Shown here in pieces: positions 33,430 through 55,255 of a stretch of DNA of 64,000 nt (positions are counted from its first letter, which is position 1; each line of letters starts with the position of its first letter). Origin of the DNA: Mobula birostris. Lineage: Eukaryota. Under the pieces are notes generated by a model. It was not told the DNA's origin. It did no database searches and was given only the letters and a program-made list of their open reading frames with translations. The position numbers were made by a program, and so were the translations under genes. The DNA lies in the NCBI RefSeq assembly GCF_030028105.1, contig NC_092374.1:176910057-176974056 (forward strand), given 5' to 3'.

Positions 33430-33940
33430 TTTGTGCTGAGCAGCTTCCCTCGGGCTATTGGGAGGTTTCTGAAATTTACATTCGCCGGATTTGATGCAAC
33501 ACGACTGGAAGTGGTTTGGCTCCACTCCCACCCGCGATCAGCCGACACTCCGCTGCCCCCACAGTCCATTTCTGTAGAAGGATTTTCAGTTACTGGCTGC
33601 ACCTGCACCTACTGGCCGCGTCTGTGAATCTGACTCCACCCTCAGCAGTTCACTGACTAACGATCAGTGTTCAGTCGATGCGAGGAGTCGTCGCAATGGA
33701 GAGCTGGACCGGACCGGTATCGCTCCTTGTCACCGCGTTATCTCTCTGCTCTGTCGCGGGAGACCAGGCAGGTGAGGCGAGGGTATGTGACGGCGATGGT
33801 CGGGGGTTGTGTCGGGAAATTCACCTTTAAATCTTTTGGAGTTCCTGGCTGTCGCTCCATTAGACGGCAGGACGAACTCATCGCACTCCTATGTTCTCAT
33901 TTCACTCTTATCAAATTTCTGGAGTTGATGAACTCGGGGC
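33430..33940. promoter_or_regulatory. CpG island / promoter of host gene
   Basis: Dense CpG in non-repeat sequence against a CpG-depleted background; inverted CCAAT (gattgg at 33418, tattgg at about 33455); overlaps the leader exon. Confidence 0.75.
33696..33771 (+). CDS. First coding exon (signal peptide) of an unidentified secreted or membrane protein; leader 1a
   Basis: gcaATGg Kozak; MESWTGPVSLLVTALSLCSVAGDQA plus 1 nt; donor CAG|GTGAGG, phase 1. An in-frame upstream ATG at 33678 would add MRGVVA. Confidence 0.75.
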
Positions 33941-34080
33941 AAAATGATCCTTGAATATGTTTCACAGGTGGATAGGAATTGTCGCCAGCTCCCAGAGGAA
34001 AGTCCCACAATCTTAACAGAGGCATCACATTAAAGCAATTAATCTGAGTTTAACTATCCCGTAACTGCCATATTACGTCA
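33814..34080. promoter_or_regulatory. NF-kB and CRE-like motifs in proximal intron
   Basis: GGGAAATTCA 33814-33823; GGAAAGTCCC (exact reverse of GGGACTTTCC) 33997-34006; TTACGTCA 34073-34080. Confidence 0.5.
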
Positions 34081-34884
34081 GTCTGTTTCACAATACCAGA
34101 GAAATGCCCCTGTTCTACCCATTCCTCTAGGGTCTGCACACACATAGCGGTCCGAGTGGCCTCTTTCTGTGCTTTATGTGTGAATGACTTCTCTGCTAAC
34201 AAAAACTAACTTGATTTCTCTCATTCCAAGTTCTGACTCAGGCTCCCGAATCTGAAACATTCATTCTTTGTCTCCCGGCAGATGCTACCCGAACTATTGC
34301 AAGATTTCCATCTTGGCCATTAAACATTAGCCCTGTTTCTCTGTCCTTGCATGCTATCGGAACTGCGGAGCTTTCCGTCTTTATCTTGAGATATTAACAG
34401 TTCCTCTTTTCCCCCGATACTGCCTGGCCTGTTGACTATTGTCAGAACTTTTTCTTTCTATTTTCAAAGTGCAACAAGAGTTGGCTCTAAGTTTTGGCGA
34501 TTGCTGTGGTAATAGATTGGCAGAACATTGATGCATGCTATGTACAAAGACTTCTGGGAGGTTTTGTAAAATCGCCAGGTTAACACCGCTCATGCCAAAT
34601 GATGCAGCGGGAAGTGGAGGCAGTTGCCAGTGGACATGAGTGGCGATTTCATCAAAGCTCTGGTGTTGGGGTGGTTGGTCAGTATGTTTACACATGGCAG
34701 ACTAAGGGAGAGTGTTCTGTGTCTGCACTGGCTGCTTACAGAAAATACAATGAAAAAGGAAGCAGAAGAAATAGAAGCCATAAATCACTAAGAACAATAT
34801 TGCTCAGTTTCAGTTAATTTAGGTAGCCGGGAATTTAGGACGCTCAGGGAGGTTTTAGGTACGTTCAGTCCAATTCATCGTTAT

Positions 34885-35112
34885 ATGCATAAGAATGTTT
34901 TTTTTCTCAGTGCCATACTCTGCGACCACTTTTTCAAGTGGTTGTCTTTGGAGGAAAGATTCTATGAGTGGCCCCCCAAGTCCTTCTCACAGCGCAGTGT
35001 TCTTCTTACGAGGCCGAGTTGCGTACTCGACACACAACCCGGCACGGATGGAAAGTTCGAATGGCTCCGGAGTCCAGAGCTGATGTCACTGCGCCACCAG
35101 CCGGCCGATAAG
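34885..35112 (-). mobile_element. Probable tRNA-head SINE with RTE-like pseudoknot segment
   Basis: Minus strand ggccggctggtggcgcagtgacatcagc (A-box-like), then tttccatccgtGCCGGGTTG...CAACTCGGCctcgtaa hairpin and A-rich end. Confidence 0.5.
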
Positions 35113-36037
35113 AATGGTAAGATACAGATAAAATGAAAATCTCGCTTGCAGCAGCATTACATCAGGCATATTCAGGGAACACACAGAATGACAGTTACGC
35201 AAAGCTTATGCAAGTCAATGAACAAAAATAACTGCCGATTGAAACAGCAGAGCTAAAAAAAACACACACACACAATCAGAGATGGCCAGCTGCAACAGTA
35301 CACGGGGAAGCAACAGTGGTTGTGCCTCTGGCACTGAGTCTGGCCCTGTGGCTCAGAAGGGTAGGGAATTAAGAGGACGGCAGCAGTAATAGGAGATTCT
35401 GTAGGCAGGGGGACAGATGGGTGATTCTGTAGAAGCAGAAAGGAAACACATGTAGGGTTCTCAGCAATACTAGATGGACTATTAACTGTTAATTGCTTAT
35501 TACCAAAATGGCTTCTCTGAAGTGTTATACTAAAATGGCTTCTCGTACTGTAAACTGCTGAGACAGGGGTTCTCTGTAACCGCAAGTGTTGCTTAGTGAA
35601 AATGGAAATTGTATTCATTTGCTAGCCAATGGAAGTCATGTTATGTTATCTTGCATGTGTGTGCTGAGTTGAGGAGCGCGGGCTTTTTCGGGAGGCGAGA
35701 AGAGAGGACGGACGTGCGGGGAACGGACAGCGGTTCCAGGACGGCAGATACCGGACCTCGGGGGTTCGGATGGTGGCCGGAGTCTCGGAAGGAAGTTGTG
35801 AATGGAATCGGAGGTGTGAGCTCCAACGTATTAAAATATTATGTGCACAAGACTGACAAGTTACTTATGTGGCGCCTTTTCTTTTAGTTGTTGCCAAAAC
35901 TTGCTATATAGTATAATTCGTTCCTCGCACTCGGTATATTGTTTGGTATTTGTGTCGTGGCTGATCATTGGGTGGCGGGGTCGACGCCTATTGACCCTAG
36001 GCAACGGGAGTCAGCTGGGGCAAAGACCATTACATTG

Positions 36038-36057
36038 TGGGGGCTCGACCCGCGGAT
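36038..36057 (+). other. Primer-binding site, tRNA-Pro type
   Basis: TGGGGGCTCG 3 nt after the 5' LTR matches the first 10 nt of the canonical tRNA-Pro PBS (TGGGGGCTCGTCCGGGAT). Confidence 0.75.
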
Positions 36058-36104
36058 TTCAATGCCGTCGGATAGTGTAAATCGCCCGAGTTAAATTAGA
36101 AGAG

Positions 36105-37500
36105 ATGGATGCGTATAAGATTGAACCTTGGTGTGAGATCTAGGATGTCCCGGTTAATCATGCCTGCGTATTAAGTGGGGTGGATATACATACCCCGGAC
36201 GATGTGTTAATTCGATATTTGAATATGGTCAGAGCTATCGGTAAGGTAGAGATTGTAAGCAGAAAGGTTGGTAAAACGGGAGACTCAGCTTTTGTGCTGA
36301 TACGGGCTGGTGTTGAAGTCAAGGAATTGGGACTGTCCCAGTCTATCGGTGAGGTAGGTGAGGCGGGGCCATGGGGCGTGCAAACTGTCACGGAGGAAGG
36401 GTTTGAAGAGACACCAGAGAAGTTGCCCGAGGCTAGAGGCGGAGATTTTAGAGAGCGGGTCCATTGGTTTTTGAAGGATGAAGGAAGGGAGTGATCGGAT
36501 TTGGAGAATGTAATTAGTTCTCATTCCCCAGGGAAGGCGGAGGGCTCTGAGTTGGCCTCAGCCATTAACTCTTTGGTGAACCGGGTGATGGGTCCGCGAC
36601 CGAAGTTAAGAATTTTCTCAGGGAAGACCCCATCCCCGACGGGGAAGAGGATTATGAGTCCTGGATAGAACATACCTCTCAGCTGCTGGGTGAGTGGCAG
36701 TGTTCTGAGGAGGAGAAGCGACAAACATTGGGGGACAGTTTGAGAGGGGCGGCAGCTGAGGTGGTAAAAGGGGTGAGAGTTAACCAGCCCCTGGCTTCTT
36801 GGAAGGAGTGTCTAGCCGCCCTAGAGGAGGCGTTTGGGCTGACGGGAAGCACGGTGGAGCTTTTCGGTGGGGGTTGCGGGGGGCGGAATTCAGAATTTGC
36901 TTCAGGAGAAAGGGGAAAAGCCTTCTGAGCATCTTCTCCGACGAGAGCGTAGGCTAAATTGCTTGAGGCGACGGGGGGTCATTTGGGGAATGAGGTGGAT
37001 CGGATAAGGATCGACCAGGTAGCCAGGGGCGCGCAGAGACATGATGTGATCATTACGACCCTCCGGCAGTCCCGTAAAGCGCGTCCCCACCTCCCCACGC
37101 CCCCCGCCCCGCTTTGGTTCAGTTGCTCAGAGAAGTAAGGGAGGAGGAGGACGAATTGGAAGCGGAACTGGGATCCGTTAACAAGGTACAAACCTCGGTA
37201 GTAGCTCCATGTGGTGTAATGACCGGGGTCAGCTCTACGCAGGAGATACAAAAGGAGGTCGCGGCAGGTGGGGACCCTCCGCAGGAGGAGACTAGCGGAG
37301 AAGGCCCCTCCCTGAAGGGACGGACGGCGCTGAGGCCAGGCGAAGGCCGGGGTCCCGCGAGGCGAGGCATGTGCTATAACTGCGGGGAAGAGGGGCACTT
37401 CAGGCGTGAATGTGAACGGCAGGGAGCCCCTCCGAGGGAGAGCCCCCGGGTGTCCCAGCAGGAAGGGGGGGGGTCGGGAAACTTAGAAGAGACGCAGTGA
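36105..37500 (+). pseudogene. Gypsy gag, PNMA-like capsid with CCHC zinc knuckle (frameshifted)
   Basis: N-terminal WC...VLSGV...GKVEIVSR; LRIFSGKTPIPDGEEDYESWIEH...W...EEEKRQ...SLRGAAAEVV; CYNCGEEGHFRREC. Confidence 0.9.
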
Positions 37501-37519
37501 GGGAACGGACTGGAGTCTC
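37476..37519 (+). promoter_or_regulatory. Candidate -1 ribosomal frameshift signal at gag-pol junction
   Basis: In-phase G GGA AAC (37476-37482), 6-nt spacer, then stem GAGAC-g-CAGT/ACTG-ga-GTCTC. Confidence 0.65.
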
Positions 37520-37579
37520 TGGAAAAATACGTTCCCAACAATGTGCAGCGGGACCATCGAAAGGAAAAGACCTTATCCC

Positions 37580-40310
37580 ATAGAACATAGAATAGTACAG
37601 CACAGTACAGGCCCTTCGGCCCACAATGTTGTGCTGACCTTCAAACCCTGCCTCCCATATAAGCCCCTACCTTAAATTCCTCCATATACCTGTCTGGTAG
37701 TCTCTTAAACTTCACCAGTGTATCTGCCTCCACCACTGACTCAGGCAGTGCATTCCAGTCACCAACCATTCTCTGAGTAAAAAACCTTCCTCTAATATCA
37801 CCCTTGAACTTCCCACCCCTTACCTTAAAGCCATGCCCTCTTGTATTGAGCAGCGGTGCCCTGGGGAAGAGGTGCTGGCTATCCACTCTATCTATTCCTC
37901 TTATTATCTTGTACACCTCTATCATGTCTCCTCTCATTCTCCTTCTCTCCAAAGAGTAAAGCCCTAGCTCCCTTAATCTCTGATCATAATGCATACTCTC
38001 TAAACTAGGCAGCATCCTGGTAAATCTCTTCTGTACCATTTCCAGTGCTCCCACATCCTTCCTATAGTGAGGCAACCAGAAATGGACACGGTACTCCAAG
38101 TGTGGCCTAACCAGAGTTTTATAGAGTTGCATCATTACATCGTGACTCTTAAACTCTATCCCTCGACGTATGAAAGCTAACACCCCATAAGCTTTCTTAA
38201 CTACCCTATCCACCTGTGAGGCAACTTTCAGGGATCTATGTACATGTACCCCCAGATCCCTCTGCTCCTCCACACTACCAAGTATCCTACCGTTTACTTT
38301 GTACTCTGCCTTGGAGTTTGTCCTTCCAAAGTGTACCACCTCACACTTCTCCAGGTTGAACTCCATCAGCCACTTCTCAGCCCACTTCTGCATCCTGTCG
38401 ATGTCTCTCTGCAATCTTTGCCAATCCTCTGCACTATCTACAACACCACCAACCTTAGTGTTATCTGCAAACTTGCCAACCCACCCTTCTACTCCCATAT
38501 CCAGGTCGTTTATAAAAATCACGAAAAGTAGAGGTCCCAGAACAGATCCTTGTGGGACACCACTAGTCACAATCCTCCAATCTGAATGTACTCCCTCCAC
38601 CATGATCCTCTGCCTTCTGCAGGCAAGCCAATTCTAAATCCACCTGGCCAAACTTCCCTGGATCCCATGCCGTCTGACTTTCTGAATAAGTCTACTGTGT
38701 GGAACCTTGTCAAATACCTTACAAAAATCCACATAGATCACATCCATCGCACTACCCTCATCTATATGCCTGGTCACCTTCTCAAAGAACTCTATCAGGC
38801 TTGTTAGACATGATCTACCCTTCACAAAACCATGCTGACTGTCCCTGATCAGACCATGATTCTCTAAATGCCCAGAGATCCTATCTCTATGAATCTTTTC
38901 CAACAGCTTTCCCACCACAAACGTAAGGCTCACTGGTCTATAATTACCCAGACTATCCCTACTACGTTTTCTGAACAAGGGGACAACATTCGCCTCCCTC
39001 CAATCCCCCAGTACCATTCCTGTGGACAATGAGGACATAAAGATCTTAGCCAGAGGCTCAGCAATCTCTTCCCTTGCCTCGTGGAGCAGCCTGGGGAATA
39101 TTCCGTCAGGCCCCGGGGACTTATCCATCCTAATGTATTTTAACAACTCCAACACCTCATCTTCCTTAATATCAACATGCTCCAGAACATCAACCCCACT
39201 CATATTGTCCTCACCATCAAGTTCCCTATCATTGGTGAATACCGAAGAGAAGTGTTCATTGAGGACCTCGCTCACTTCCACAGCCTCCAGGCACATCTTC
39301 CCACCTTTAGCTCTAATCAGTCCTACCTTCACTCCTCTCATCCTTTTTTTCTTCACATAATTGAAGAATGCCTTGGGGTTTTCCTTTACCCTACTTGCCA
39401 AGGCCTTCTCATGCCCCCTTCTTGCTCTTCTCAACCCCTCCTTTAGCTCCTTTCTTGCTTCCCTATATTCCTCAATAGACCCATCTGATCCTTGCTTCCT
39501 AAACCTCATGTATGCTGCCTTCTTCCACCTGACTAGATTTTCCACCTCACTTGACACCCATGGTTCCTTCACCCTACCATTCTTTATCTTCCTCACCGGG
39601 ACAAGTTTATCCCTTACATCCTGCAAGAGATCTCTAAACATCGACCACATGTCCATAGTATATTTCCCTGCAAAAACATCATCCCAATTCACACCCGCAA
39701 GTTCTAGCCTTATAGCCTCATAATTTGCCCTTCCCCAATTAAAAATTTTCTTGTCCCCTCTGATCCTATCGTTTTCCATGATAATGCTAGAGGCCAGGGA
39801 GTGGTGGTCACTGTCCCCCAGATGCTCACCCACTGAGTGGTCTGTGAGCTGACCCGGTTCATTACCTAGTACTAGATCTAGTATGGCATTCCTCCTAGTC
39901 GGCCTGTCCACATACTGTGACAGGAATCCATCCTGGACACTCTTAACAATCTCTGCCCCATCTGAACCCTTGGAACTAATCAGGTGTCAATCAATATTAG
40001 GGAAGTTAAAGTCACCCATGATAACAACCCTGTTATTTTTGCACCTTTCCAAAATCTTCCTCCCAATCTGCTCCTCTGTATCTCTGCTGTTACCATGGGG
40101 CCTATAGTATACCCCCAATAGAGTAACTGCTCCCTTCCTGTTCCTGACTTCCACCCCTACTGACTCAAAAGAGGATCCTGCTACAGTACCCACCCTTTCT
40201 GTAGCTGTAATAGTATCCCTGACCAGTAATGCCACACCTCCTCCTCTTTTTCCACCCTCTCTATCCCTTATAAAGCACTGAAATCCAGGAATATTGAGAA
40301 TCCATTCCTG
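37580..40310 (-). mobile_element. 5'-truncated CR1 inserted just upstream of the Gypsy protease
   Basis: ORFs 37641-38603, 38634-39911 and part of 39987-40403 (APE, GVPQGSVLGP, KFADNTK); tagaacatagaatag tail. Removing it restores KDLIPEGLVGP with a CCC duplication. Confidence 0.95.
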
Positions 40311-43300
40311 CCCGGAAGGTTTGGTGGGACCCCGATCCAGCGTGTCGATCTGGATAGAAGGGATAGGTGCAAAAGCCATACTCGACACCGGGTCACAGGT
40401 CACATTACTGTACCGTCATTCTACAATCAGTATCTGGCGCATTTACCCCTGACACCTTTCAGTGCACTGGAAATTTGGGGTATCCGCGATGGTGATTACC
40501 CGTACGATGGCTATTTGTCTGTGAAATTGGAGTTCCTGGAAGCTGAGCTGGGGTGTCTGAGGCTCATGAGGCCCTGGTACTGGTTTGCCCAGATCCCAGT
40601 GAGACGCTAGGGGGGGGCTATCAATTCTGGTGGGGACCAATAGCCCTATTGTGTGGAGACTCCTGGAAGCCTAGAAGGAGAAGGCGGGTGAAGACTTTTT
40701 GGAGACCCTGTCAGTGCACCCAGTGTTCTGAGCTGCTTTTGAGGAAGTGTGGGGTCACCCTGGGCTGGACGCAGCGTGTGAACAAGGCACTGTGTGGTGT
40801 GCCCAGTCGAAGCCCAGGGTGGTGTGGCCGGGTGAAGTAGCAAGAGTGATGGGGATCCCTAGATTCCCAGGAGTGCTTGAGGGTGAAGCCCTTTTAGTGG
40901 ACACCCCGGAAGATCTGAAGGGGGAGTCGAGATTCCCTGCTGGGGTGCTGTTGAAACACAAGTTGCAGAAGCTCTCGGTGGTACAGGCACGCAGGCTAGT
41001 GTGATCATCAGGAACACAACGGCACGGGAGGTCACCTTCAAGCGAGGAATGCCTCTGGTGCATTTGTTCCAGGTGACGGTGATGCACAGCGCCCCCGTGA
41101 AGCCAGTTGGGGGAGAGCTGTCGGGAAAAAGGTGTAAGTTAACCGCTGAAGCTTTTAACTTTGGGGCATCACCTGTGCCGGAGAGTTGGAAGCGGAGGCT
41201 GGTGGAGAAGATGTTGACGATGGCAGATGTTATTTCCCTTGACGAGTTTGATGTGGGTTGATCCAGGAGCACTCGCCACACCATATGGGTGACTGAGGAT
41301 AGTCGTTTAGGGAACGATCACGGCGCCTGGCCCCTGCAGACGTGGAAGACGTGCGGCAGTATTTGTGTAAATTGAAGGAGGCTGGGATCATCACGGATTC
41401 CCGAAGCCCTTATGCGTCTCCTATCGTAGTGGCCCGAAAGAAGAATGGAAAGGTTCGTATGTGTGTGGACTATAGAATACTGAACAGGCGCACGGTCCCT
41501 GATCAGTACACAGTCAATAGACAATAGACAATAGGTGCAGGAGTAGGCCATTCAGCCCTTCGAGCCAGCACCACCATTCACTGTGATCATGGCTGATCAT
41601 CCACAATCAGTACCTTTTCCCTGCCTTCTCCCCATATCCCTTCACTCCGCTATCTTTGAGAGCTCTATCTAACTCTTTTTTGAAAGAATCCAGGGAATTG
41701 GCCTCCACTGACTTCTGAGGCAAAGCATTCCACAGAACCACAACCCTCTGTGTGAAAAAGTTTTTCCTCTACTCCGTTCTAAATTGTCTGCCCCTTATTC
41801 TTAAACTGTGGCCTCTGGTTCTGGACTCCCCCAACATCAGGAACATGTTTCCTGCCTCTAACATACAAATCTTATATGTTTCAATCAGATCCCCTCTCAT
41901 CCTTCTAAATTCCAGTGTATACAAACCCAGTTGCTCCAAGTCGCTTTCACAGTGTTGGACTTGAGGAGTGGGTATCACCAGATCCCGATGAGTGAGGCCA
42001 ATAAGGAGAAGACGGCCTTTATATGCCCTCTGGGATTTTATCAGTTCGAAAGGATGCCCCAGGGCATATCGGGGGCCGCTGCCACTTTCCAGAAGGGTTA
42101 CGGAGAAGACAGTTGGGGATATGCACCAACTCGAAGTGCTGGTATATTTGGATGACCTCATAGATTTGGATCCACCTTGGAAGAACATGAAGCGAGACTG
42201 ATGAAGGTGCTCAACTGGCTGAAGCAGGAAGGGTTAAAACTTTCCCTGGACAAGTAACAGTTCTACCAGACATCTATTGGCTATGTTGGACACATCGTCT
42301 CGCAGAATTGGAGTAGCTGCAGACCCAGCTAAGAGCGAAGCGGTGACCTCCTGGTTGAGGCCCCAGACCATGAGTGCTCTGCTCTCGTTCCTGGAGTTCT
42401 GTGGGCACTATCGGAGGTTCGTGAAGGGCTACGCCAAGGTGAGTCATGTCTTGAATCAGCTTCTGCGTGGCTACCCACCACCCCCCCCCCCCGGGATAGA
42501 GGGGGAAAGGGAGGAAAGGACGGGAGTTTGGAGAATATTTCAACCAGTCAAAGCCCTTCGGACAGAGATGGGATGGCCAATGTGAAGCGGCTTTCCAGTC
42601 ACTGAAGGAGATGCTGGCTCAGGCGCCAGTACTGGCTTCTGCGGACCCACGATTGCCCTACGTGCTACACACTGACACCAGACATGGGGGGTTAGGGGCT
42701 GTTTTATACCAGGATCAGGGAGCTGGCCTGAGGTTTGTGGCTTTTGTCAGTCAGGGTTTGTCACTCTGGGAGAGAAACTATCCCACTCAGAAGTTGGAGT
42801 TCCTGGCGTTGAAGTGGGTGGTGGTGGATAAGCTGAGAGACTATCTCTATGGGGCCAAGTTTGAGATGAGGACAGACAACAACCCACCTACATCCTGACC
42901 TCGGCGAAACTGGATGCCACAGACCATCGGTGGCTGGCTGCTTTGTCTGTATATGATTTCAGCCTGAAGTACCGGCTGGGGAGCTGGAATGCCAATGTGG
43001 GGCCATGAGGACCCGCGGAAGGACGAGGAGTGGGATAGTATCCCTGCATCTGGGGTGAAGGCAATGAGCCAGTTTGCTATCACCGTGCAGGCTGAGGAGA
43101 AGGAGAGGCCGGATCGAGCAGTGGACTCACTGGGGGCATCTGATGACACCCTGCCCCCAGATTACTGTGACCTGACTGCTCTGAAGACCATGCAGCTGCT
43201 GGGGTTGAGCCCTGGGGAAGTGGCTGCTGCTCAGCGAGATGACCCGGACATTAGCCCTGTCTGGCATGCCGTGGAAGAGGGGGATGTGACACGGGCGGAG

Positions 43301-44480
43301 AAGTCTAAGCACGACTCAGGGTCTCTGTTACTGAGTGAATGGCTTCCGTTGAGGTTGAAGAACCAAATGTTATACTGTACCGGGTAACGTCACCCCCGGA
43401 TCGACCTCGGTGTTGGCAGCTGGTCCTGACGGAGAAGTATCGGAAGGTTGTTTTGAAGTCCCTCCATGATGACTCTGGACGTTGGGGATGGAAAAAACCT
43501 ATGGTTTGCTCAAGGATCGATTTTACTGGCCCCGGATGAGGATGGAGGTTGAAGAGTACTGCAAGTCCTGCATTCGTTGCAAACGGCGGGAAGACGCTGC
43601 CCGGGCAGCTGCCCCTTTGTCCCAATTGCAGAGTGCGGGGCTTTTGGACCTGGTGTGTATGGATTTCCTGGCCATAGAACCCGATGCCAGCAACACAGAG
43701 AATGTCTTGGTCATCACGGGCCACTACACCAGGTATGCTCAAGCTTTTCCTACGGAGGATCAGAGGGCGATCACAGTGGCAAAAGTGCTATGGGAGAAGT
43801 ATTTTGTGCATTATGGCCTTCCTCGGCAGACACATAGTGATCGGGACGAGATTTTCAGATTAAGCTCATCTATGAGTTACTGGGCATGCTGGGGGTTGAG
43901 AGATCGAGGACCACGCCCTATCATCTGCAGGGCGATCCCCAGCCGGAAAGATTCAATCGGACGCTGCTAGACATGCTCGGGACTCTGGAGATCAGCAAAA
44001 AGAATTGTTGGAGTCGACATATTGGGCATGTAGTTCACTGTTACAACTGTATACGTAATGAAGCTACTGGTTACTCTCCCTATTATCTTATGTTTGGGCG
44101 CGAGGCAAGGTTGCCCATTGACCTTTGTTTCGGGACTGATGCAGGTGAGGAATCACCGAAGCCTTACCTGAAGTTTGAGTCTGATATGAGGAAAGAGCGG
44201 AAAGGAGTTTACGATTTGGCCAAGGAGGCGGCCGCCCGGTAGAATCAGGGAAATAAGAGGAGGTATGACCAGAAAGTAAAGTTCTCTCAACTTCTACCGG
44301 GAGACCGAGTCCTCATCAGGAATCTGGGATTACCGGGAAAACGCAAATTGGCTGATCGCTGGGCACCCACGCCCTATGTTGTGCAGAGTCAGATGCCAAA
44401 CCTACCGGTTGTCTGGGTGCAGCCCAAGCATGAAAAAGGGCCTGTCAAGATCCTCCATCTGAATCACCTGTTGCCCTTGG
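40311..44480 (+). pseudogene. Gypsy pol: protease, dUTPase-like segment, RT, RNase H, integrase
   Basis: ILDTGSQVT; SPYASPIVVARKKNGKVRMCVDY; YLDD; LHTD...GLGAVLYQ...EFLALKW; H..H..C..C; VCMDF...FPTEDQ...HSD...PERFNRTL. Confidence 0.93.
41516..41939 (-). mobile_element. Short CR1 3' end inserted in Gypsy RT
   Basis: aatagacaatagacaatagg tail; ORF 41769-42188 contains [17 protein letters not shown]. The Gypsy RT is interrupted after DQYTV and resumes at FTVLDL, suggesting a target deletion. Confidence 0.9.
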
Positions 44481-45062
44481 GGCAAGATTACAGGTAGAGC
44501 GAGAGCCTGATGGGCCGACTGCACCCAATACCAGGACTCTGCGTCCCCACAAGGTTGAGGACCGTGCCTACCCCGGGAGAGACAGGCCTGAGACCAGGTC
44601 CTGTGAGGGATACCAATTCGGAGGATGATGACTGGGATGGTTGGTACATTCTGCCATTCGCTGATGCTCCTGTGATGGAGGAAGAGACTCCTGGCCTTTC
44701 CCCCACTGGGTTAGACGGGGCTAGTGAGGGGCAGTCCGTGGTATGCAGGGCGCTGAACCAGAGATAGAGGGTTACGAGGTGTAGAGGGGCTTGGGTGACC
44801 GCACGGGGGAGGATTCGCCTCGTAGTTTTAAAGGGTCCCCTGTAGTGCCCGAAGCGGAAGGGTTAGAAGAGGGGGTACGTAGGTCTCGGAGAAGTCGGAA
44901 ACCCCTAGAGAGGTTGGCCTATGTAGCACCCAGGGAACAAGGTGTGATCGCTACCGTTTTGGGGAGTCAGATCACTGCTTTCTGCACGTGGATTGGGCTG
45001 TGTGTTCTGCAGGAAGGGATGGTGAATTATCTGAGCGTCATGAGGGCATGAAATATTTCGGT

Positions 45063-45072
45063 GGGGGGAGAA
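45063..45072 (+). other. Polypurine tract
   Basis: GGGGGGAGAA immediately before the 3' LTR. Confidence 0.9.
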
Positions 45073-45960
45073 TGTAGGGTTCTCAGTAATACTAGACGGA
45101 CAGTTAACTGTTAATTGCTTATTACCAAAGCGGCTTCTCTGAAGTGTGATGCTGAAATGGTTTCTCGTACTGTTAACTGCTGAGCCGGGGGTTCTCTGTA
45201 ACCGCATGTTTGGGTTATACTTGGTGATAATGGAAATTGTATTCATTTGTTAGCCAATGGAAGTCATGTAATGTTAGCTTGTATGTTTGTACTGAGTTGA
45301 GGAGCGCGGGATTTTTCGGGAGGCGAGCAGAGAGGACGGACGTGTGGGGTACGGACAGCGGTTCCAGGGCGGCAGATACCGGACCTCGGGGGTTCGGATG
45401 GTGGCCGAAGTCTCGGAAGGAAGTTGTGGATGGAATCGGAGGCGTGAGCTCCAACGTATTAAAATATTATGTGCACTAGACTGATAAATTACTTATGTGG
45501 CGCCTTTTCTTTCAGTTGTTGCTACTAACCCATCACCAAAACTTGCTATAAAGTATATTTCTTTACTCGCACTTGGTATATTGTTTGATATTTGTGTCGT
45601 GGCTGATCATTGGGTGCCTTACACCGTATCCGCACCAAAGCATTTGCACTGTATGGCGGGGTCGATGGTTATTCACCCAGTTGGGGAGTCAGTTTAAGGC
45701 CGTTACACACAGATGGCTCCCAGGTGCCAGGGTCTGAGATGTTTCTGGGCGCGTCCACAATATCCTCAAAAGGGAGGGTGAGCAGAGAGAAGCCGTGGTA
45801 CATATTGGTGTCAATGATTTAGGAAGGAAAAGGGACGAAGTCCTGAGAAAAGAATACAGGAGAAAGGAAAGAAGCTGAGGAGCAGGACCTCAGGAGTAGT
45901 AAAATCTCAGGATTGCTGCCTGTTCCACGTGGCAGTGAGGATAGGAATAGAATGAGGAGG

Positions 45961-45995: not shown

Positions 45996-46145
45996 AATCA
46001 ACAGCTCCTCCGGAAAAACGGATATTTTGCCCCGTTAATGCATCAAATCTAAGATCTTTCGAACATATCTGAATTGATAAGGGGGGGGGGGGCAAGAATG
46101 GGGAGAAAGAATGGAGATTAAAAAGAAAGCCCCACTGCGGAGCCT

Positions 46146-47010: not shown

Positions 47011-47519
47011 GGACAAGACTGTGAGTTCTCCGAAGACAACCCTCACCTCCTCCAGAAGAGCCATAAGGTTTGGCTAACATTGAAAGTGCTGATAAACTAA
47101 ACAGAAGCAAAAATAGACGGTGATATACCTATCTCGAGAAATACGTGTTATAATGTGGTTTTTATATTACTCAATTTTTTAAAAAAATCATTTATTCATT
47201 CCTTTTTCCCCACCTAAATGAGAATATATACATGGGAGGGATACACAGGCAGATCATATCTGTGTAATGGACGTAGTTTTTTTTTGCTTACTATTATAGG
47301 TACTGCAGCAGGGCCCTCAACCCACAGGTAGGAGGGACTATACCCCACGGCTAGACTTTTCTTCTAGCCCAACCCAGAGTCATCTAGAGACCCCAGCCTT
47401 GGAAGCACAGCTTCGTTACCTTTTTATTATTCGCGTTTCTTGGCTCTTATTTGTTCAGGGAGTAGATCGATTAAGTTATATTCTGCAAATTTCAATTATA
47501 CACTAACAGATAATTACAC

Positions 47520-50500
47520 ATGGCTAAGGACAAAGTAAAATTCATTTCTTTTAATGTCAATGGGCTGTTGAATCCAGTCAAGCACAGTAAAATTCTATCA
47601 AAAATGAAAAAAGAACAACCCCATGTAGTATATTTACAGGAAATTCACTTAAGTGATAATGAGCATGGAAAATTAAAGAGAGTGGGCTTCACTAATTTGT
47701 TTTTCTCCTCATATAAATCAGGACATAGAAGAAGAGTTGCTATTCTCATCTCAAGTAAGCTAAATTTCGAAGAAGTATTCAAAATGGGAGATAAGGAGGG
47801 CAGATATATTCTGGTAAGGGGAATATAGGTGGAAATCCAGTTACTTTATTGAATATATACACACCCTCAGGAATTGATACTAGTTTCTTCCAGAAAATTA
47901 CTAATATTATGGTAACAGAAACAGAAGATCTCTTGATATGTGGGGGAGACTTAAATTTACAATTACAACCAAAGCTAGACTCTTCCAATAGGAAAACTTA
48001 TGAAACAAAGTCCTTACATAAGAAAGTTAACACTGTTTTTGAGGATGTTGGACTAATTGATATATGGAGGGACCTTTTTGCCGCCAGAAGGGATTACATT
48101 CAATATTCTGCCCCCCCCCCCCAATTCCGTATATACAAGAATATACTATTTCATAACATTTGGAAAAGACAGAGACAAAATAATCACCTGTGGAATTGGG
48201 ACAATAGATGTAAGTGACCATGCACCTATATATTTATCTGTTGATTTTGACCTACAACCAAAGAATACCATTTGGAAACTAAATTCAAGTCTACTCAATG
48301 ATCCCTATTTTAAGGAACAAATTAAAAAAGAAATTGGTCTTTACTTAGAATTCAATGATAATGGAAAGGTTTCACCTCCCATTCTATGGGATACTCTGAA
48401 GGCTGTCTTAAGAGGGAAAATTATAGCGATATCTTCATATAAGAAAAAACAGGAATAGAACATTAGAGGAATTACAAAATAAGCTGAAGGAGCTAGAAAA
48501 AAACACAAATTGAGTTTGGCACAGGATATACTAGAGGCAATTAAGACATTAGGAATGAAATTAATAGTTTGGCTGCACAAGAAATTAGAAAAAAAATCTA
48601 ATGTTTCTGAAACAGAGACACTACGAAAGTGGATCCAGATCTATGAAAATACTGGCGTGGAAACTGAAAAAACAGGGAGCAGAAAATACAATTCATAGAA
48701 GTAGGGAGTCAAGAACAAAAGTGATAAAAAAAAATAAGCTAAGTGAAATTCATGAAGCTTTTGAAATGTTTTACAAAACTCTATATTCCAAAGTTACAGG
48801 GGGAAACTTAACCCAAATTGACACCTTCCTGAATTCTTTAGAGTTATCCACTTTAAGCAAAGAACAAAATAGAAAGATGACTACTGACATAACTGAAGCT
48901 GAACTAAAAACTGCAATTAGTAGGCTTAAATTAAGCAAGGCACTGGGATCAGATGGATATACAGCAGAATGGTATGAAGAGTTTAGAAGTGAGTTAACCC
49001 CTGTTTTACTCCCCACGCTGAACTAGGCCCCAAGAAAAGCACAAATGCCACCCAGCTGGAAGAAGGCGATAAGCTCAACTATACAGAAAGAAGGCAAGGA
49101 TAAAATAGAATGTGGGTCATTTAGACCAATACCTGTTCTTAATGTGGATTATAGAATATTTACCTCCATCACTGCCAAATGATTAGAAGAATTTCTACCC
49201 ACACTGATACAAAATGATCAGACAGGTTTCATACAACAACGCCAAACACAAGACAATATACGAAGGACACTTCACATTATGAATCACGTAAAAAAATGAA
49301 ATTGAAGCAATAGTGATAAGCATGGATGCTGAAAAGGCATTTGATTTGGTTAATTGGAATTTTCTCTATAGAGTTTTACATGGATTTGGTCTACATGACA
49401 CAATTATTAAAACTATACAGGCACTATACAACAATCCTACTGCCAGGATTAAAATCGATGGATATTTATCTAATAGTTTTACCCAGAAAGGGGCACGAGA
49501 CAGGGTTGTGCATAGTCACCGCTACTCTTTGCATTATATCTGGAACCATTAGCTCAATACATCAGACAAAATGAAGATATCAGGGGAATTACTATTAAAG
49601 GGACAGAGCATAAATTGGCCTGTTACATGTGTAGCCCCCCTGACCAACCTCATGTTCGCTTGGTTCGCTGTCGTCTAGGGAAACAGCCCTCTGCCCTGCC
49701 AATCTGGGTAATTAGTTTGTGTGGATGTTGTGTGATGTACCCAACCCCGCCCAAATAACAGACAAATATACCAGATACGATTAAATGATTTACAGTTTAT
49801 AGATATTACTGGAACTATATAATTAATAGAGAATAAAATACAAAAGGAAAATAAAAGGCGCCACACTTATCAATGTTCAATCTCTTTGTGCACAAACAGT
49901 TGGAGCTCAGGACCCTTCTTCTTTACCCTGAAACCCCTCGGACCACCTCGACCGGCCGCCTGGGACCAACAATGGTGGTCAACCAAATGCTCCTCCACGA
50001 GTCCGTCTGGGTCTCCTCTCCTCTCCAAATGCCCCGCTCGGGGTCCGACCCCGTTAGCGGACATCACAGCACCTGGTCCATCCTCTGTCTCCCGCCTTCT
50101 CCTTCCAAAACCCCGCGCATACAAATCTTACAGATACCAAAAGCCTAACAACTATCCCAATTGTTTCGTAGCATCTTCTTATCACAATCTAACCCAAAAC
50201 AAGCTGCTAGCGCAACAACTTGCTCAGTCTTTAACATAACAAAGAAGCATTCCCAAGTATAACATAACAAAGAAGCCATTTTAATTAGCCTACACAGTAA
50301 CATAAAAGACGAAACCCCCATACACGTGGATGACATTTTGATCTATCTTGGGCAACCAACAGACTCTTTACCTAAATTGATGCAATCCTTTGAACAATAT
50401 GGCCAATTATCAGGATACAAGATCAATATAGATAAAACCGAACTACTTTCATATAACTATAGTCCACCAAGGGAAATTGAAAGTAGATATACTTGGGCAT

Positions 50501-52029
50501 GGCAAACAGAGTCCATCAAATATTTGGGCATCATTATGCCAAAAGGTTTGGCAAAAGTATCAGAATGCAATTATCAGCCAATATATAAAAAATTAAGGAA
50601 GATATAACAAGGTTGAACCTAATCCCTTTTCTTGGTCTCAGTTCAAGGATTGAATCTATTAAAATGAATATACTGCCCAGACTACTATATCTCTTTCAGA
50701 CCCTACCAATAGAGATTAACCAAAATCAATTCAATGAGTGGAACAAGATGCTATTAAGATATATATGGCAAGGTAAAAGGCCTAGGGTTTGTCTCAAAAC
50801 TTCGTAATTAGCCAAGGAAAAGGGGGACTGTGGCCTGCCTCTCATAGAGATTATTATTTTGCAGCACATTTGAGAGCTGCGATATGCTGGTGCAACCCAT
50901 CATATGACACTCAAAGGAAAAACATTGAGGAGAGTATTCTTTCCATCTCCATACAGGCAATTTTGACTGACAACAACCTACAGTTACATAAATAATATTG
51001 ACAACCCGTGGGTGAAATTGACTCTTAAAATATGGAAAACTATTATAAAAGAATGTAAACCGGATAGAGACATTGCAATCCTTAAATGGTGTGCATATGA
51101 TTCGGATTTTACACCGAATAAACTGGATGCTAGATTTAAGGACTGGACAGCTAAAGGAATAACAGCTATTTGCAATATAATGAAAGAAGGAACACTGTTC
51201 AGTTTTGAAATGCTCAAAGAGAAACACGCGTTAGAAAAACAAGACTTTTACAGATGTGACAGCATGTTAATATGTTAATAAGATGGTTAAAAATGTAACC
51301 AAGGCAGGTGCATGTCTGATAGAGCTGTTTAGAAAAGCATATAATTCAGACAATGGTAGTATGATCATTTCAACCATGTATAAGGATTTGTCAAATCTTA
51401 AAACGCATTCAACTTCATACATTAAAACAAAATGGGAGAAGGAAGGAGGAATGATAGTATCTGAGGAAGACTGGACAATAATATGGAGGTATCAATGGAA
51501 GTGTACCAGTTCACAGAAATGGAGGGAGTCCGGGTGGAAAAACTTGATAAGATATTTTATTACACCCTCACAGAAACCCCATTATGATAACAACCTCCCT
51601 GTTTGCTGCAGAAATTGTGGAAATTAAAATGCAAGCCATTATCATATTTTCTGGGAATGCCCCGTTATCAAAGACTACTAGATTGGGATACATAATGCCC
51701 TGCAGGACATCTTTAAATGTGAAATACCCTTAGAGAGTAAGACCATATACTTTGGGTATATACCTCAAGAATGTTTGAAAAGAGATAAATATTTAATGAA
51801 TGTACTGCTGGTAGCTGGTAAAAAGACTCTTACCAGGAAATGATTATCACAGGACAGCCCAACTCTAAATGTATGGATGGAAATTACAATGGACATTTAC
51901 AAAATGGAGAAGATAACAGCATCTGTTAATCATAAGTTGGAACAATTTTATTCATGCTGGAAAAATTGGTTTAACTACATAACACATCATAAGCCTGGTA
52001 TTATTCTCACGTTAATGAATATGTTGTAA
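47520..52029 (+). pseudogene. L1 ORF2 (APE, RT, CCHC), many stops and frameshifts, interrupted by a solo LTR
   Basis: ISFNVNGL..YLQEIH; SDHAP; WKLNSSLL; GSDGYTAEWY; DQTGF; DAEKAFD; CY/VDDILIYL; CCRNCG. Confidence 0.93.
49630..50324 (-). mobile_element. Solo LTR (695 bp) related to the Gypsy LTRs, inserted in the L1 YADD codons
   Basis: TGTATGGGG...GGGGCTACA termini on minus; shares gagctccaac...gtgcacaa...tgtggcgccttt with the 35451 LTR; flanks CATG / CGTG. Confidence 0.9.
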
Positions 52030-52435
52030 AAAAAAAGATCACTCCCTACTATGTACATAGTTTTCTTCTTTCGATTATTCTTTCTTTCCTCTCTTTTCTG
52101 TAAGTGTATACCTCAGATAATTACTATGCGGAGATTTGTGACAAATATGATTATATGATATATATGTACAGTATCTGAAATACATCTTATAGAAATATTT
52201 GATGATGAAATTCAATAAAAAATAAATTACAAAAAAAAGGAGTAGAATGAGGAGGCAGGTAAAGATGTGGCTGAAGAATTGGAGCAGGGGAGAGGGATTC
52301 AGATTTCTGGATAATTGGGCCCTCTTCTGGGGCAGGTGAGACCTGTACAAAAAGGCCATGTTGCACTTGAATCCAAGGGGGACCAATATTCTTGCGGGCA
52401 AATTTACTGGATCTGTTGGGAGTGGTTTAAACGAA

Positions 52436-53698
52436 TACTTTATACTTTTTGCTTTATTGTCGCCTAACAATTGGTACTAGAACATACAATCATCACAGCA
52501 ATATTTGATTCTGCGCTTCATGCTCCCTAGATTACAAATATTAAATATTATAAATATTAAGATTTAAATTATAAATCATAAATAGAAAAATGGGAAGTAA
52601 TGTAGTGCAAAAATACCGAGAGGCAGGTCCGGATATTTGGAGGGTACGGCCCAGATCCAGTCAGGATCCGTTCAGCAGTCTTATCACAGTTAGAAAGAAG
52701 CTGTTCCCAAATCTGGCCGTACGAGTCTTCAAGCTCCCGAACCTTCTCCCGGAGGGAAGAGGGACAAAAAGTGTGTTGGCTGGGTGGGTCGTGTCCTTGA
52801 TTATCCTGGTAGCACTGCTCTGATGGCGTGCGGTACAAATTGAGTCCACAGACGGAAGATTGGTCTGTGTGATGTGCTGCGCTGTGTTCACAATCTTCTG
52901 CAGCTTCTTTCGGTCTTGCACAGGACAACTTCCATACCAGGTTGTGATGCACCTTGCTTTCTAAGGTGCATCTATAAAAATTAGTGAGGGTTTTAGGGGA
53001 CAGGCCAAATTTCTTTAGTTTTCTCAGGAGGTAAAGGCACTGGTGGGCCTTCTTGGCAGTGAACTCTGCTTGGTTGGACCAAGTCAGGTCATTTGTGATA
53101 TTGACCCCAAGGAACTTAAAGCTTTTGACCTGTTCCACTTGCGCACCACCGATGTAAATTGGGTCGTGCGGTCCGCTACTCCTTCTGAAGTCAACAACCA
53201 ATTCCTTCGTCTTGCTGACGTTGAGGGATAGGTTATTGTCTTCGCACCATGCCACCAGGTTCTTAATTTCCTCTCAGTACTCAAACTCATCATTACCCGA
53301 GATATGGCCTACAATTGTTGTGTCATCAGCAAACTTATATATTGTGTTTGATGGAAACTTGGCTACACAATCATGGGTGTACAGTGAGTACAGCAGGGGG
53401 CTGAGTACACAGCCTTGTGGGGCACCGGTGCTCAGAGTGATTGTAGAGGAGAGCTTGTCCCCTATTTTTACAGCCTGGGTCCTGTGTGTGAGGAAGTTGA
53501 AGATCCAGCTGCAGATCTGAGTGCTAAAGCCCAGGTTCCGGAGCTTAGGAATCAGTTTATTTGGAATGATGGTATTAGAGGCAGAGCTGTAGTCAATGAA
53601 AATGAGCCTTACGTATGCGTCTTTATTCTCCAGGTGTTCTAAGGAGGAATGTAGGGCCAGAGAGATGACATCTGCCGTTGACCTGTTGCTCCGGTAGC
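52436..53698 (-). mobile_element. 5'-truncated Rex1/Babar LINE
   Basis: ORF 52569-53255 WCEDNNLSLNVSKTKELVVDFRR...FKFLGVNI...RFGNSFFLTVIRLLN; [14 protein letters not shown]-like upstream. Confidence 0.9.
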
Positions 53699-53789
53699 TG
53701 GGATTATCCAGTATGGTCAGAGTGGAGCAACAAACATCAAATTTGCTGGTGAACGCAGCAGGCCAGGCAGCATCTCTAAGAAGAGGTAT

Positions 53790-53824
53790 AGTCGATGTTT
53801 CAGGCGAGACCCTTCATCAGCAAC
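53790..53824 (-). ncRNA. Hammerhead motif in isolated PLE tail (about 53725-53875)
   Basis: CTGATGA-agggtctcgcct-GAAAC-ATC-gact; both core boxes intact, helix I 5' arm missing. Confidence 0.6.
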
Positions 53825-54063
53825 TTTGATGTGCGTTGCTTGAATTTCCAGCATCTGCAGAATTCCTCTTGTTTGCATGGTTAGAGTGGAATTTGTTTAG
53901 ATGTCACTGTTAGTAGGGGAAGTGCCCCTCATCTGGAGAGGGAAGCACTTCACGTCCTACCATTTGCTGTCTGGCAAATATGGTGGGTTCTGGTTAATTA
54001 GGGAGGGAGGGAGGGATCTGCACCTTGTAAGGCATGAAAATGCCCGATGCAGGCCTCAAGGTG

Positions 54064-54727
54064 TGAGTCAACGTTCACTCCCTGGTTAATTAGACCACCG
54101 GTTAATTGGGGCAGCCACGTACATGGGATAACTCTTAAAAGACAAAAATGCGTTGAGAAAATAGCTGGGATTCCCTTCATTTATTTGTGATATATCAGAG
54201 GGGAAGAGAACCGAGTAAAAATTTTGAATCACAAACCCTTCTTTCGGAACAGCCTCTCCACTTTATTAGTGGTGCAGCTAATTAATTCAGTACAGAACAT
54301 AGAGGAAATTTGTATCTTATTGCTCATTAAGACTCATTATAACCCTGGGCTGTTATACCTTAATCCTGAACTATCTTCCAAGCCTTGTCAGCAGGTTACT
54401 GAACGTTAATAAAGTTCAAAAACAATCATAGGTCTTGGCAAAAGGTCTACAGTATATCTATTGTATCTCTGCCTTGCATAATTTCATACACCTCTGTCAG
54501 GCCGCCCCTCAACATCCGAGGCTCCAGAACAAAAAAAAAACTGGACTCTAACTTCTGTTTATAACCAGCAATTGCCGCGCCGCTCTGTTAGTTTCTATTT
54601 CTCAAACAGCAGGCGTCAAGACTGCCTGGTAACTGGTGATCAGACTTCCTTAAGCTTCTAATTGACTGCCTGTATAGGAAAAGCTTTTTTTTTTTTTTAA
54701 CAGGCTTAGCACCGAGTACCCGGAAAT
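54064..54727 (+). promoter_or_regulatory. Immune-type promoter/enhancer upstream of leader 1b
   Basis: AP-1 TGAGTCA 54064; kB-like TGGGATTCCC 54166-54175; ISRE AGTTTCTATTTCTC 54590-54603; X1/X2-like CCTGGTAACTGGTGATCA 54625-54642; Y-like CTAATTGA 54658-54665; Ets CCGGAAAT 54720. Confidence 0.55.
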
Positions 54728-54821
54728 GAAGCCGTAGAGTTGTGTGGATAAATTTGTTGGTTTTCATTTTATTTTTTATATAATTTTATTCTGTGTCCCG
54801 GCCGAGCATTAAGTTTGGGGA

Positions 54822-54873
54822 ATGTTGCTGATACTCTGTGCCTTGTGTCTTTCCATTCGTCCGGTTTGCCCAG
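54822..54873 (+). CDS. Second signal-peptide exon (leader 1b), phase-1 donor
   Basis: ggaATG; MLLILCALCLSIRPVCP plus 1 nt; donor CAG|GTAACT; lies in unique, CpG-retaining sequence. Confidence 0.6.
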
Positions 54874-55255
54874 GTAACTGGTGATTTCATCAACCCAGCC
54901 TCCACTGTCGTCCCGGGAGACACACTTCGTTGATAATTTTAGACTATGATTAGGGTTTGAAAGGGGTGATATTTAATCCTTGCCCGATAAAGGACTCCAG
55001 TGAAGGATTCCTGTGTAACTTCCCTGACTAACAATAGGGCGTATGATTACAGAACCGGGGAGGTCATAAACGGGGAACAGACAACATTAAAATGATCCGT
55101 TTTAAATTGATTTCGGAACTACAGGAATAGGGGTGATCTGCACTCCTCCAGTATGGCTGAGCTCTACTGTTGTTGAGCCATGGCCCATCAGACATGCAGC
55201 GCACAGTGTGCTCTATGTGCCCCCTATTGCGGAGGATTGTCCCTCTCTATACTCT

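What the first reader, a model, noticed from the sequence alone, without database searches (positions are those of the whole stretch)
33678..54885. Two phase-matched signal-peptide exons 21 kb apart: candidate constitutive versus cytokine-inducible leader switch
Seen: leader 1a (MESWTGPVSLLVTALSLCSVAGDQA, CAG|GTGAGG) sits in a CpG island. Leader 1b (MLLILCALCLSIRPVCP, CAG|GTAACT) sits amid ISRE, GAS and kB motifs. Both end in phase 1. I found no in-frame exon in the small unique stretches between them or after 1b. Established: a phase-1 leader exon is typical of Ig-superfamily and MHC genes. Inference: one immune surface or secreted gene uses alternative promoters, each with its own signal peptide, spliced to a common exon 2 beyond 64 kb.
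Basis: partly seen in the sequence, partly recalled or inferred. Interest (0 to 1): 0.75.

Follow-up and report, generated by a model that had tools for sequence, protein, structure and literature searches.

The report
Manta UFA leader exon plus intronic look-alike
The first "leader" is the real, already annotated signal-peptide exon of a giant manta ray MHC class I-like (UFA, CD1-like) gene, about 35 kb ahead of the rest of the gene; nothing found here shows that the second "leader", a small open frame inside that long intron, is ever used.

Summary
Both mini-ORFs are in the sequence as described, and both end in phase 1 at GT donors.

**Leader 1a is real and known.**
- From ATG 33678 its 31 residues equal the start of NCBI protein XP_072113435.1 (Mobula birostris, 318 aa, MHC_I and C1-set domains), which continues with the class I alpha1 start GSHSL.
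- That gene spans 47,540 nt.
- The leader is conserved across rays, sawfish and sharks.
- RNA-like contigs show its donor in use.

So 1a is exon 1 of a UFA gene that this scan already reported in the neighbouring window (s1-145111).

In two runs 1a is spliced to a 206-nt exon at 34911-35116, where the leader frame hits a stop. This is an unproductive alternative form.

**Leader 1b lies in intron 1.**
- It is not related to 1a.
- No family member or isoform in the databases starts like it.
- RNA-like runs hold only 2 of 16 sampled words around it.
- It is rarer than chance ORFs, and the window's only full ISRE lies 220 nt upstream. No GAS or kB consensus is nearby.

**Verdict:** this is an ordinary long-intron class I-like gene, and the leader switch is unsupported (about 8%).

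The parts
33419..33461 (+). Two inverted CCAAT (ATTGG, Y-box/NF-Y type) motifs at 33419-33423 and 33457-33461, 50-90 nt upstream of the 5'-most RNA contig end. Probable core promoter of exon 1a.
   Evidence: Motif scan and sequence read. Function is inferred.
33251..34000 (.). CpG-rich island around exon 1a (GC 0.53-0.54, CpG o/e 0.61-0.84; window mean 0.37).
33510..33771 (+). Exon 1 of the UFA-type class I-like gene (5'UTR plus leader). The 5' limit is only the furthest reach of a contig. The 3' end is the used donor, 33771|GT.
   Evidence: contig pieces lie at 33510-33771 (X3), 33580-33761 (X12) and 33663-33771 (X2), and a GT..AG joint leaves 33771. Word shares are 0.9 and 0.6 in two runs.
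33678..33771 (+). Leader coding part: 31 codons plus 1 nt (MRGVVA + MESWTGPVSLLVTALSLCSVAGDQA). The conserved start is ATG 33696, which has a strong Kozak context (G at -3, G at +4).
   Evidence: Identical to residues 1-31 of P0003 = XP_072113435.1. In the leader alignment the only invariant column is the MESW methionine.
33997..34006 (-). Perfect kB consensus GGGACTTTCC, 225 nt into intron 1 behind exon 1a.
   Evidence: Function is not tested.
34911..35116 (+). 206-nt alternative (cassette) exon, with acceptor tttttttctcag| and donor ATG|GTAAGA. The leader frame ends at TGA 35081-35083.
   Evidence: joint 33768->34908 'GT..AG (cut +3)' in X12 and X13, with pieces 34908-35118 and 34908-35116. 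Its open frame has no real protein homologue.
35450..45616 (+). LTR retrotransposon filling part of intron 1. The LTRs are 35450-35974 and 45072-45616 (88-93% alike), with an integrase zinc domain at 43473-43967 (+). A LINE is nested on the - strand (endonuclease 39990-40415, RT 37644-39986).
54590..54601 (-). The only full ISRE consensus in the window (GAAATAGAAACT), 220 nt upstream of the 1b ATG. It is followed by an X1/X2-like CAAACAG..GCGTCA.
   Evidence: (1 match, 0.22 expected). Function is not tested.
54822..54873 (+). 'Leader 1b': 17 codons plus 1 nt (MLLILCALCLSIRPVCP), donor CAG|GTAACT. It lies inside intron 1 of the UFA gene. No evidence of use was found.

Best explanation
The window holds the 5' end of one annotated giant manta ray gene, a UFA-type (CD1-like) non-classical MHC class I gene (NCBI XP_072113435.1).

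Exon 1 (about 33510-33771) is driven by a CpG-rich, CCAAT-box promoter. It encodes the family's conserved signal peptide and ends in phase 1. It is spliced across a roughly 35-kb intron packed with retrotransposons to the alpha1 exon, which lies beyond the window.

Part of the transcripts instead include a 206-nt exon 1.1 kb downstream (34911-35116). That exon closes the leader frame, so this form is unproductive or leaderless.

'Leader 1b' is a short hydrophobic ORF with a decent donor, sitting inside that intron. It is either a chance ORF or the orphaned remains of another promoter and leader. It is not a working second signal-peptide exon of this gene in any data available.

What is shown and what is inferred:
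- Shown: the identity of 1a, the use of its donor, and the cassette exon.
- Inferred from the gene span and earlier notes: the position of alpha1 and the intron length.
- Inferred from absence of evidence: that 1b is not used.
For: 1; a profile holding the 1a frame retrieved only MHC class I-like proteins (Pfam MHC_I and C1-set, 231-318 aa) from Mobula birostris, M. hypostoma, Hypanus sabinus and Hemitrygon akajei.
2. P0003 begins with the exact 31 residues encoded at 33678-33770, followed by GSHSLMYYY. Among the manta paralogues only P0003 has ...AGDQA.
3. P0003 = XP_072113435.1.
4; its gene spans 47,540 nt. 33678 + 47,539 = 81,217, which falls in the stop-bearing last exon noted at 81,141-81,254 (s1-145283).
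5; the best solved structure, 8gm8_A (E 2.9e-62), starts at P0003 residue 32, the first residue after exon 1a.
6; the leader is conserved from sharks to rays.
7. RNA-like contigs cover exon 1a and stop at, or splice from, 33771. The flanking unique intron bins have zero depth.
8; none of the 22 family hits and none of the further cluster members read has a 1b-like N-terminus, and P0003's cluster has one member. Alternative isoforms P0026, P0029 and P0030 start inside alpha1 with no leader.
9; there is no homology between the 1a and 1b regions.
Against: - 1b is rarer than a typical chance ORF: none of 60 shuffles reached its donor and hydrophobicity values.
- It is on the gene's strand and in the right phase.
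- The window's single full ISRE lies 220 nt upstream of it, next to an X-box-like GCGTCA motif. A TATA-like element lies about 45 nt upstream.
- Five RNA-like runs hold 2 of 16 sampled words of 54700-54900. One of them (X1) was not listed as holding 1a.
- I could not lay reads on 1b, because the single read-laying run went to 1a.
- All runs are contigs whose RNA nature is a guess, and no stimulated tissue was available.
Confidence: 0.85

Rival explanations
1. One reading: 1b is a genuine second, interferon-inducible promoter and signal-peptide exon of the same UFA gene. It would be spliced to the same alpha1 exon as 1a and give MLLILCALCLSIRPVCP-GSHSL...
For: - 1b has the same strand and phase 1 as 1a and lies upstream of alpha1.
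- It combines a strong hydrophobic core (mean KD 3.37) with an 8.7-bit donor, which no shuffle reached.
- The window's only full ISRE is 220 nt upstream, with a TATA-like element about 45 nt upstream.
- RNA-like runs hold 2 of 16 words.
Against: - No protein or isoform with such an N-terminus exists in the 5.8-billion-cluster collection for this gene, its paralogues or other species.
- The leader of the whole lineage is the 1a type.
- Spliced to alpha1, the peptide would put Pro at -1 of the expected cleavage site. From general knowledge of signal peptidase sites this is unfavourable. SignalP was not available.
- No GAS or kB consensus is nearby.
- Across the 483 windows of this genome that were read, chance hits of this quality are expected.
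Confidence: 0.08
2. 1b, together with its ISRE and X-box-like module, is the orphaned promoter and leader of a different class I or interferon-stimulated gene. The rest of that gene was lost or displaced by retrotransposon insertions, leaving the module stranded in UFA intron 1.
For: - The order ISRE, then X1/X2-like motif, then TATA-like element, then a short leader ending in phase 1 resembles a classical class I promoter. This rests and on my own knowledge of HLA promoters.
- 1b is unrelated to the UFA leader.
- The surrounding 35-64 kb is almost all transposon-derived.
Against: - No class I or Ig exon remnant is detectable in 55-64 kb.
- An unconstrained relic would be expected to lose its ATG, frame or donor.
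- The motif resemblance is short and was judged by eye.
Confidence: 0.2
3. 1a's main product here is not UFA. Instead it is the 89-aa (83 aa from the MESW Met at 33696) secreted peptide or non-coding RNA made by the 1a + 34911-35116 splice form.
For: The only joint actually seen in the same-species runs X12 and X13 is 1a to 34911.
Against: - The exon-2 peptide has no homologues.
- The NCBI model and all orthologues join this leader to alpha1.
- A 762-nt contig (X3) carries exon 1a followed by 501 nt that do not lie in 32.3-35.4 kb. That length fits alpha1 plus most of alpha2.
- Contigs cannot rank isoforms.
Confidence: 0.05

Closest known systems
UFA, the CD1-like non-classical MHC class I lineage of sharks and rays (PMC10751288; PMC12562908). 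Here NCBI XP_072113435.1 of Mobula birostris.
   Same: Exon 1a encodes exactly the first 31 residues of this annotated protein. The protein has MHC_I and C1-set domains and a tail-less hydrophobic end. Its leader is shared by relatives in rays, sawfish and sharks.
   Different: Nothing differs for 1a. The UFA name itself rests on earlier notes of this scan and on the papers. I verified only the class I-like family and the best structure hit 8gm8_A ('MHC class I protein').
Leader exon of classical MHC class I genes such as HLA-A (general knowledge)
   Same: A separate short exon holds the 5'UTR and signal peptide and ends in phase 1, so the first codon of the mature GSHS... alpha1 is split.
   Different: The first intron is about 35 kb and full of retrotransposons, not a few hundred bases. 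The promoter is CpG-rich with CCAAT boxes, and no ISRE was found in the 600 nt upstream of the 1a leader (33100-33800).
Genes with alternative first exons encoding different signal peptides or leaderless forms, e.g. IL-15 long/short signal peptides and IL1RN secreted/intracellular forms (from memory, not checked here)
   Different: Only one of the two exons (1a) is shown to be used here. The alternative forms seen or annotated in this family are leaderless, and none carries a second signal peptide.
Poison or cassette exons in long first introns (general concept)
   Same: Exon 34911-35116 has good splice sites, is included in some contigs, and introduces a stop in the leader frame.
   Different: Its regulation, abundance and downstream partner were not seen. 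Its second frame would restart at ATG 35083 and run in phase into alpha1.

Membership tests
UFA-type MHC class I-like gene (exon 1) | The encoded peptide is the N-terminus of a protein with class I alpha1/alpha2 and C1-set alpha3 domains | tested here: met
   31 of 31 residues are identical to P0003, which carries PF00129 and PF07654 and continues with GSHSLMYYY.
UFA-type MHC class I-like gene (exon 1) | The annotated gene maps to this locus | tested here: met
   the span is 47,540 nt. Counted from ATG 33678 it ends at about 81,217, inside the last exon noted at 81,141-81,254. The record's DNA itself could not be fetched.
UFA-type MHC class I-like gene (exon 1) | The leader is conserved among family members | tested here: met
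   ME.W...LSLC...G motif in 15 proteins from 9 species, with an invariant start Met.
UFA-type MHC class I-like gene (exon 1) | The exon is transcribed and its donor is used | tested here: met
   word shares of 0.9 and 0.6, contigs ending at 33771, and a GT..AG joint from 33771. All runs are contigs, and RNA is a guess backed by exon-bounded coverage.
UFA-type MHC class I-like gene (exon 1) | Belongs to the lineage named UFA (lipid-binding, CD1-like groove) | not testable with these tools
   The name comes from earlier notes and from papers. The best PDB hit 8gm8_A is labelled only 'MHC class I protein'.
Alternative-promoter / dual signal-peptide gene | Both first exons are transcribed | tested here: inconclusive
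   1a is transcribed. For 1b only 2 of 16 sampled words are held in RNA-like runs, at unknown position.
Alternative-promoter / dual signal-peptide gene | Both donors join the same exon 2 | tested here: not met
   1a joins alpha1 in the NCBI model. No protein or isoform carries 1b joined to alpha1.
Alternative-promoter / dual signal-peptide gene | Both peptides are functional signal peptides | not testable with these tools
   No SignalP was available. 1a is the conserved family leader. 1b has a good hydrophobic core, but it would place Pro at -1 before GSHSL.
Interferon-inducible MHC-type promoter at 1b | ISRE, GAS and kB sites upstream | tested here: inconclusive
   The ISRE is present. GAS and kB consensus sites are absent in 54300-54900.

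The most novel reading that the evidence does not exclude
The intronic 1b unit (ISRE, X-box-like motif, TATA-like element, 17-codon hydrophobic leader, phase-1 donor) is a dormant, interferon-inducible second promoter. It would give the CD1-like UFA molecule a different signal peptide during infection. Public resting-tissue RNA would not show it.
Probability: 0.08. Interest if true: 0.55.

Novelty: already known. Interest (0 to 1): 0.15.

Why it matters
**Annotation.** The result links this window to its neighbour. The 5' exon and promoter of a manta UFA gene lie about 35 kb upstream of the exons that an earlier report described (s1-145111). Promoter analyses of that gene should therefore look at 33.2-33.8 kb and not just in front of alpha1.

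**Caution for this genome.** Phase-1 hydrophobic mini-ORFs with good donors occur inside giant, transposon-filled introns, so such an ORF is not by itself an exon.

**What would be of modest interest.**
- An interferon-switched second leader on a CD1-like molecule, if 1b turned out to be used.
- The cassette exon and the leaderless isoforms, which hint at unproductive splicing as a feature of this family.

Tried and rejected
- **Pfam scan of all 189 stop-free stretches of 80 aa or more:** only transposon domains. There is no MHC or Ig exon, so no exon 2 of domain type lies in the window.
- **Leader peptide against PDB:** nothing, as expected for a signal peptide.
- **Leader-frame stretch alone (57 aa) in the search for homologous proteins:** no candidates, because of the tool's length window.
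  - I then added an unrelated 189-aa window ORF (19569-20135, - strand) to the alignment, purely so that 104-331-aa proteins became candidates.
  - A local simulation had shown that the leader would still score. This is a workaround.
  - The hits were checked by eye and are exact leader matches.
- **Exon 34911-35116, open frame, against 1.84 billion representatives:** two hits, both repeat proteins matching a short motif many times. They are not homologues.
- **Paper searches for a UFA leader or for 8GM8:** only two papers mention UFA in passing.
- **DNA of the annotated loci:** One look-up did not complete.
- **Homology between the 1a and 1b regions:** none.
- **The idea that runs X6-X9 (0.38 of the 1b words, kind unknown) show expression:** rejected as unsafe. 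Four equal shares in small 2018 runs look more like reduced-representation DNA.
- **Loose-end letters at the 1a donor:** crowded out of the table by a neighbouring, highly expressed SINE-like repeat.
Full report
**1. Observation**

Both small ORFs are in the sequence.

Leader 1a:
- It starts at ATG 33696 (MESWTGPVSLLVTALSLCSVAGDQA).
- A further in-frame ATG lies 18 nt upstream at 33678 (MRGVVA...).
- It ends at 33771 with one spare G, followed by GTGAGG.

Leader 1b:
- It starts at ATG 54822 and has 17 codons (MLLILCALCLSIRPVCP).
- A spare G at 54873 is followed by GTAACT.

Both are phase 1 on the + strand. The 1a region is CpG-rich: GC 0.54 and CpG o/e 0.84 at 33501-34000, against 0.37 for the window.

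I set up a crude null model: ATG, 14-32 codons, a 9-residue hydrophobic core and a scored GT donor.
- At donor >=8 bits and core >=2.4, dinucleotide shuffles give 0.2 such ORFs per strand and phase in 64 kb.
- The + strand has two in phase 1, and only one other occurs in all other strands and phases.
- So both are less common than noise. The thresholds were chosen after seeing them, and 483 windows of this genome have been read.

**2. What the window contains**

I scanned all 189 stop-free stretches of at least 80 aa against Pfam. Only reverse transcriptase, endonuclease, GIY-YIG, gag/PNMA, RNase H, integrase and L1 ORF1 domains were found. There is no MHC or Ig exon.

Between the two ORFs lie:
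- an LTR retrotransposon, with LTRs at 35450-35974 and 45072-45616 and integrase on the + strand;
- a LINE nested in it on the - strand;
- L1-like sequence at 46-53 kb.

Earlier notes of this scan place a tail-to-tail pair of giant manta ray UFA genes from 5.2 kb beyond the window's end. UFA is a CD1-like MHC class Ib lineage. The stop-bearing last exon of the + strand copy is noted 17.1 kb beyond the end. Two papers mention UFA as a CD1-like, MHC-linked elasmobranch lineage (PMC10751288, PMC12562908).

**3. RNA evidence**

Word shares in RNA-like runs:
- For 33620-33790, two runs of one organism label hold 0.9 and 0.6 of the sampled words, and four runs of a second label hold 0.4.
- For 54700-54900, the best RNA-like runs hold 0.13, that is 2 of 16 words. 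Four small runs of unknown kind hold 0.38.

All data are Logan contigs, so they show presence and not amounts.
- Contigs cover 33510-33771 (X3), 33580-33761 (X12) and 33663-33771 (X2).
- The unique intron bins on both sides of the exons have zero depth, as expected of RNA.
- In X12 and X13 a GT..AG joint links 33771 to 34911, and the pieces run on to 35116/35118.

So exon 1a is real and its predicted donor is used.

Features of that exon:
- It has a strong polypyrimidine acceptor and an ATG|GTAAGA donor.
- In the leader frame it adds 57 codons and stops at TGA 35081-35083.
- A second frame is open throughout, but it has no true homologue among 1.84 billion representatives. The only hits are two repeat proteins matching a short motif.
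- It is therefore not a conserved coding exon.

In X3 a 762-nt contig carries exon 1a and then 501 nt that lie nowhere in 32.3-35.4 kb. So other transcripts skip this exon.

**4. Identity of 1a**

A search with the 57-aa leader-frame stretch alone found nothing, because the tool only sees proteins of similar length.

I then aligned the leader stretch with an unrelated 189-aa window ORF, used only as a length pad.
- A local simulation first showed that the leader would still score.
- The profile returned 13 proteins, all NCBI class I-like chains with MHC_I and/or C1-set domains.
- They come from Mobula birostris, M. hypostoma, Hypanus sabinus and Hemitrygon akajei.

P0003 is the match for this locus.
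- It is XP_072113435.1, from M. birostris, 318 aa.
- It begins with exactly the 31 residues of 33678-33770 and continues GSHSLMYYY, the canonical class I alpha1 start.
- Among the manta paralogues only P0003 has ...AGDQA, as the window does.
- Its gene spans 47,540 nt. Counted from 33678 this ends at about 81,217, inside the last-exon stretch noted at 81,141-81,254.
- Its best solved-structure match, 8gm8_A (E 2.9e-62), starts at residue 32, the first residue after exon 1a.

The leader is conserved in sawfish, electric ray and sharks. The MESW methionine is the only invariant column.

Conclusion: 1a is exon 1 of the + strand UFA gene, and its intron 1 is about 35 kb. Paralogues span 18.5 and 50.4 kb, and the M. 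hypostoma relative spans 16.7 kb.

**5. Status of 1b**

It lies inside that intron, about 14 kb upstream of where alpha1 must be.

Against its use:
- A family search with P0003 gave 22 proteins. None has a 1b-like N-terminus, and none other than P0003 itself is more than 88% identical to P0003. P0003's 90% cluster has a single member. So no 1b isoform of this gene is on record.
- The alternative isoforms NCBI predicts in paralogues start inside alpha1 and have no leader (P0026, P0029, P0030). This is what a frame-breaking extra exon like 34911-35116 would produce.
- The 1a and 1b regions share no sequence.
- Joined to GSHSL, 1b would put proline at -1 of the cleavage site (general knowledge; SignalP not available).

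For its use:
- Its donor and hydrophobic core are rare by chance.
- The only full ISRE of the window (GAAATAGAAACT, 54590-54601, - strand; 0.22 expected per window) lies 220 nt upstream.
- That ISRE is followed by a CAAACAG..GCGTCA stretch resembling an X1/X2 box.
- A TATA-like element lies about 45 nt upstream.

The claimed GAS and kB motifs do not meet their consensus within 54300-54900. The perfect kB site GGGACTTTCC is at 33997-34006, beside 1a.

**6. Verdict**

- The window shows the promoter and leader exon of a known, annotated non-classical class I gene with a giant first intron. It also shows an unproductive cassette exon and an unused or orphaned leader-like ORF in the intron.
- The constitutive versus inducible leader switch has no support. 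I give it about 8%.
- This scan already reported the body of the same gene in the neighbouring window (s1-145111, s1-145283).
- Interest is low.

Noticed in passing
window 34911-35116 (+): A 206-nt cassette exon is spliced to the UFA leader exon in two runs. The leader ORF stops at TGA 35081-35083, and that stop overlaps an ATG at 35083 (TGATG). The ATG's frame (MSLRHQPADKN) ends in phase 1, so it would read straight into alpha1 as a leaderless protein.
   Followed up: partly
window 33997-34006 (-): A perfect kB consensus GGGACTTTCC lies 225 nt inside intron 1, just behind the real leader exon. It may be an intronic enhancer of the UFA gene.
   Followed up: no
window 33419-33423 and 33457-33461: Two ATTGG (inverted CCAAT) boxes lie 50-90 nt upstream of the 5'-most transcript contig end. 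This is typical of an NF-Y-driven, TATA-less CpG promoter.
   Followed up: no
window 32300-32824: A SINE-like repeat has summed contig depth up to about 4x10^5 in all four RNA-like runs and many inverted or skipping joints. Copies also lie at 22258-22344, 60341-60427 and 53726-53805. It swamped the loose-end table of the read lay.
   Followed up: no
proteins P0026, P0029, P0030 (NCBI isoforms X2/X3 of Mobula UFA paralogues): Predicted isoforms start inside alpha1 (MPAFF..., MYYYF..., MDSHSL...) with no signal peptide. This suggests that frame-breaking 5' exons are a recurrent feature of this gene family.
   Followed up: partly
protein P0027 (XP_072115050.1, 581 aa, M. birostris): An 'uncharacterized protein' that is two UFA-like alpha1-alpha2-alpha3 units in tandem behind one leader. 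It is probably a merged gene model of two neighbouring copies.
   Followed up: no
window 2359-3120 and 31812-32573: An inverted pair of copies of one repeat family, about 760 nt long and 91-96% alike, 29 kb apart.
   Followed up: no
window 35450-45616: An LTR retrotransposon with LTRs 88-93% alike has a LINE nested in the opposite orientation. This shows that intron 1 grew by successive insertions.
   Followed up: partly
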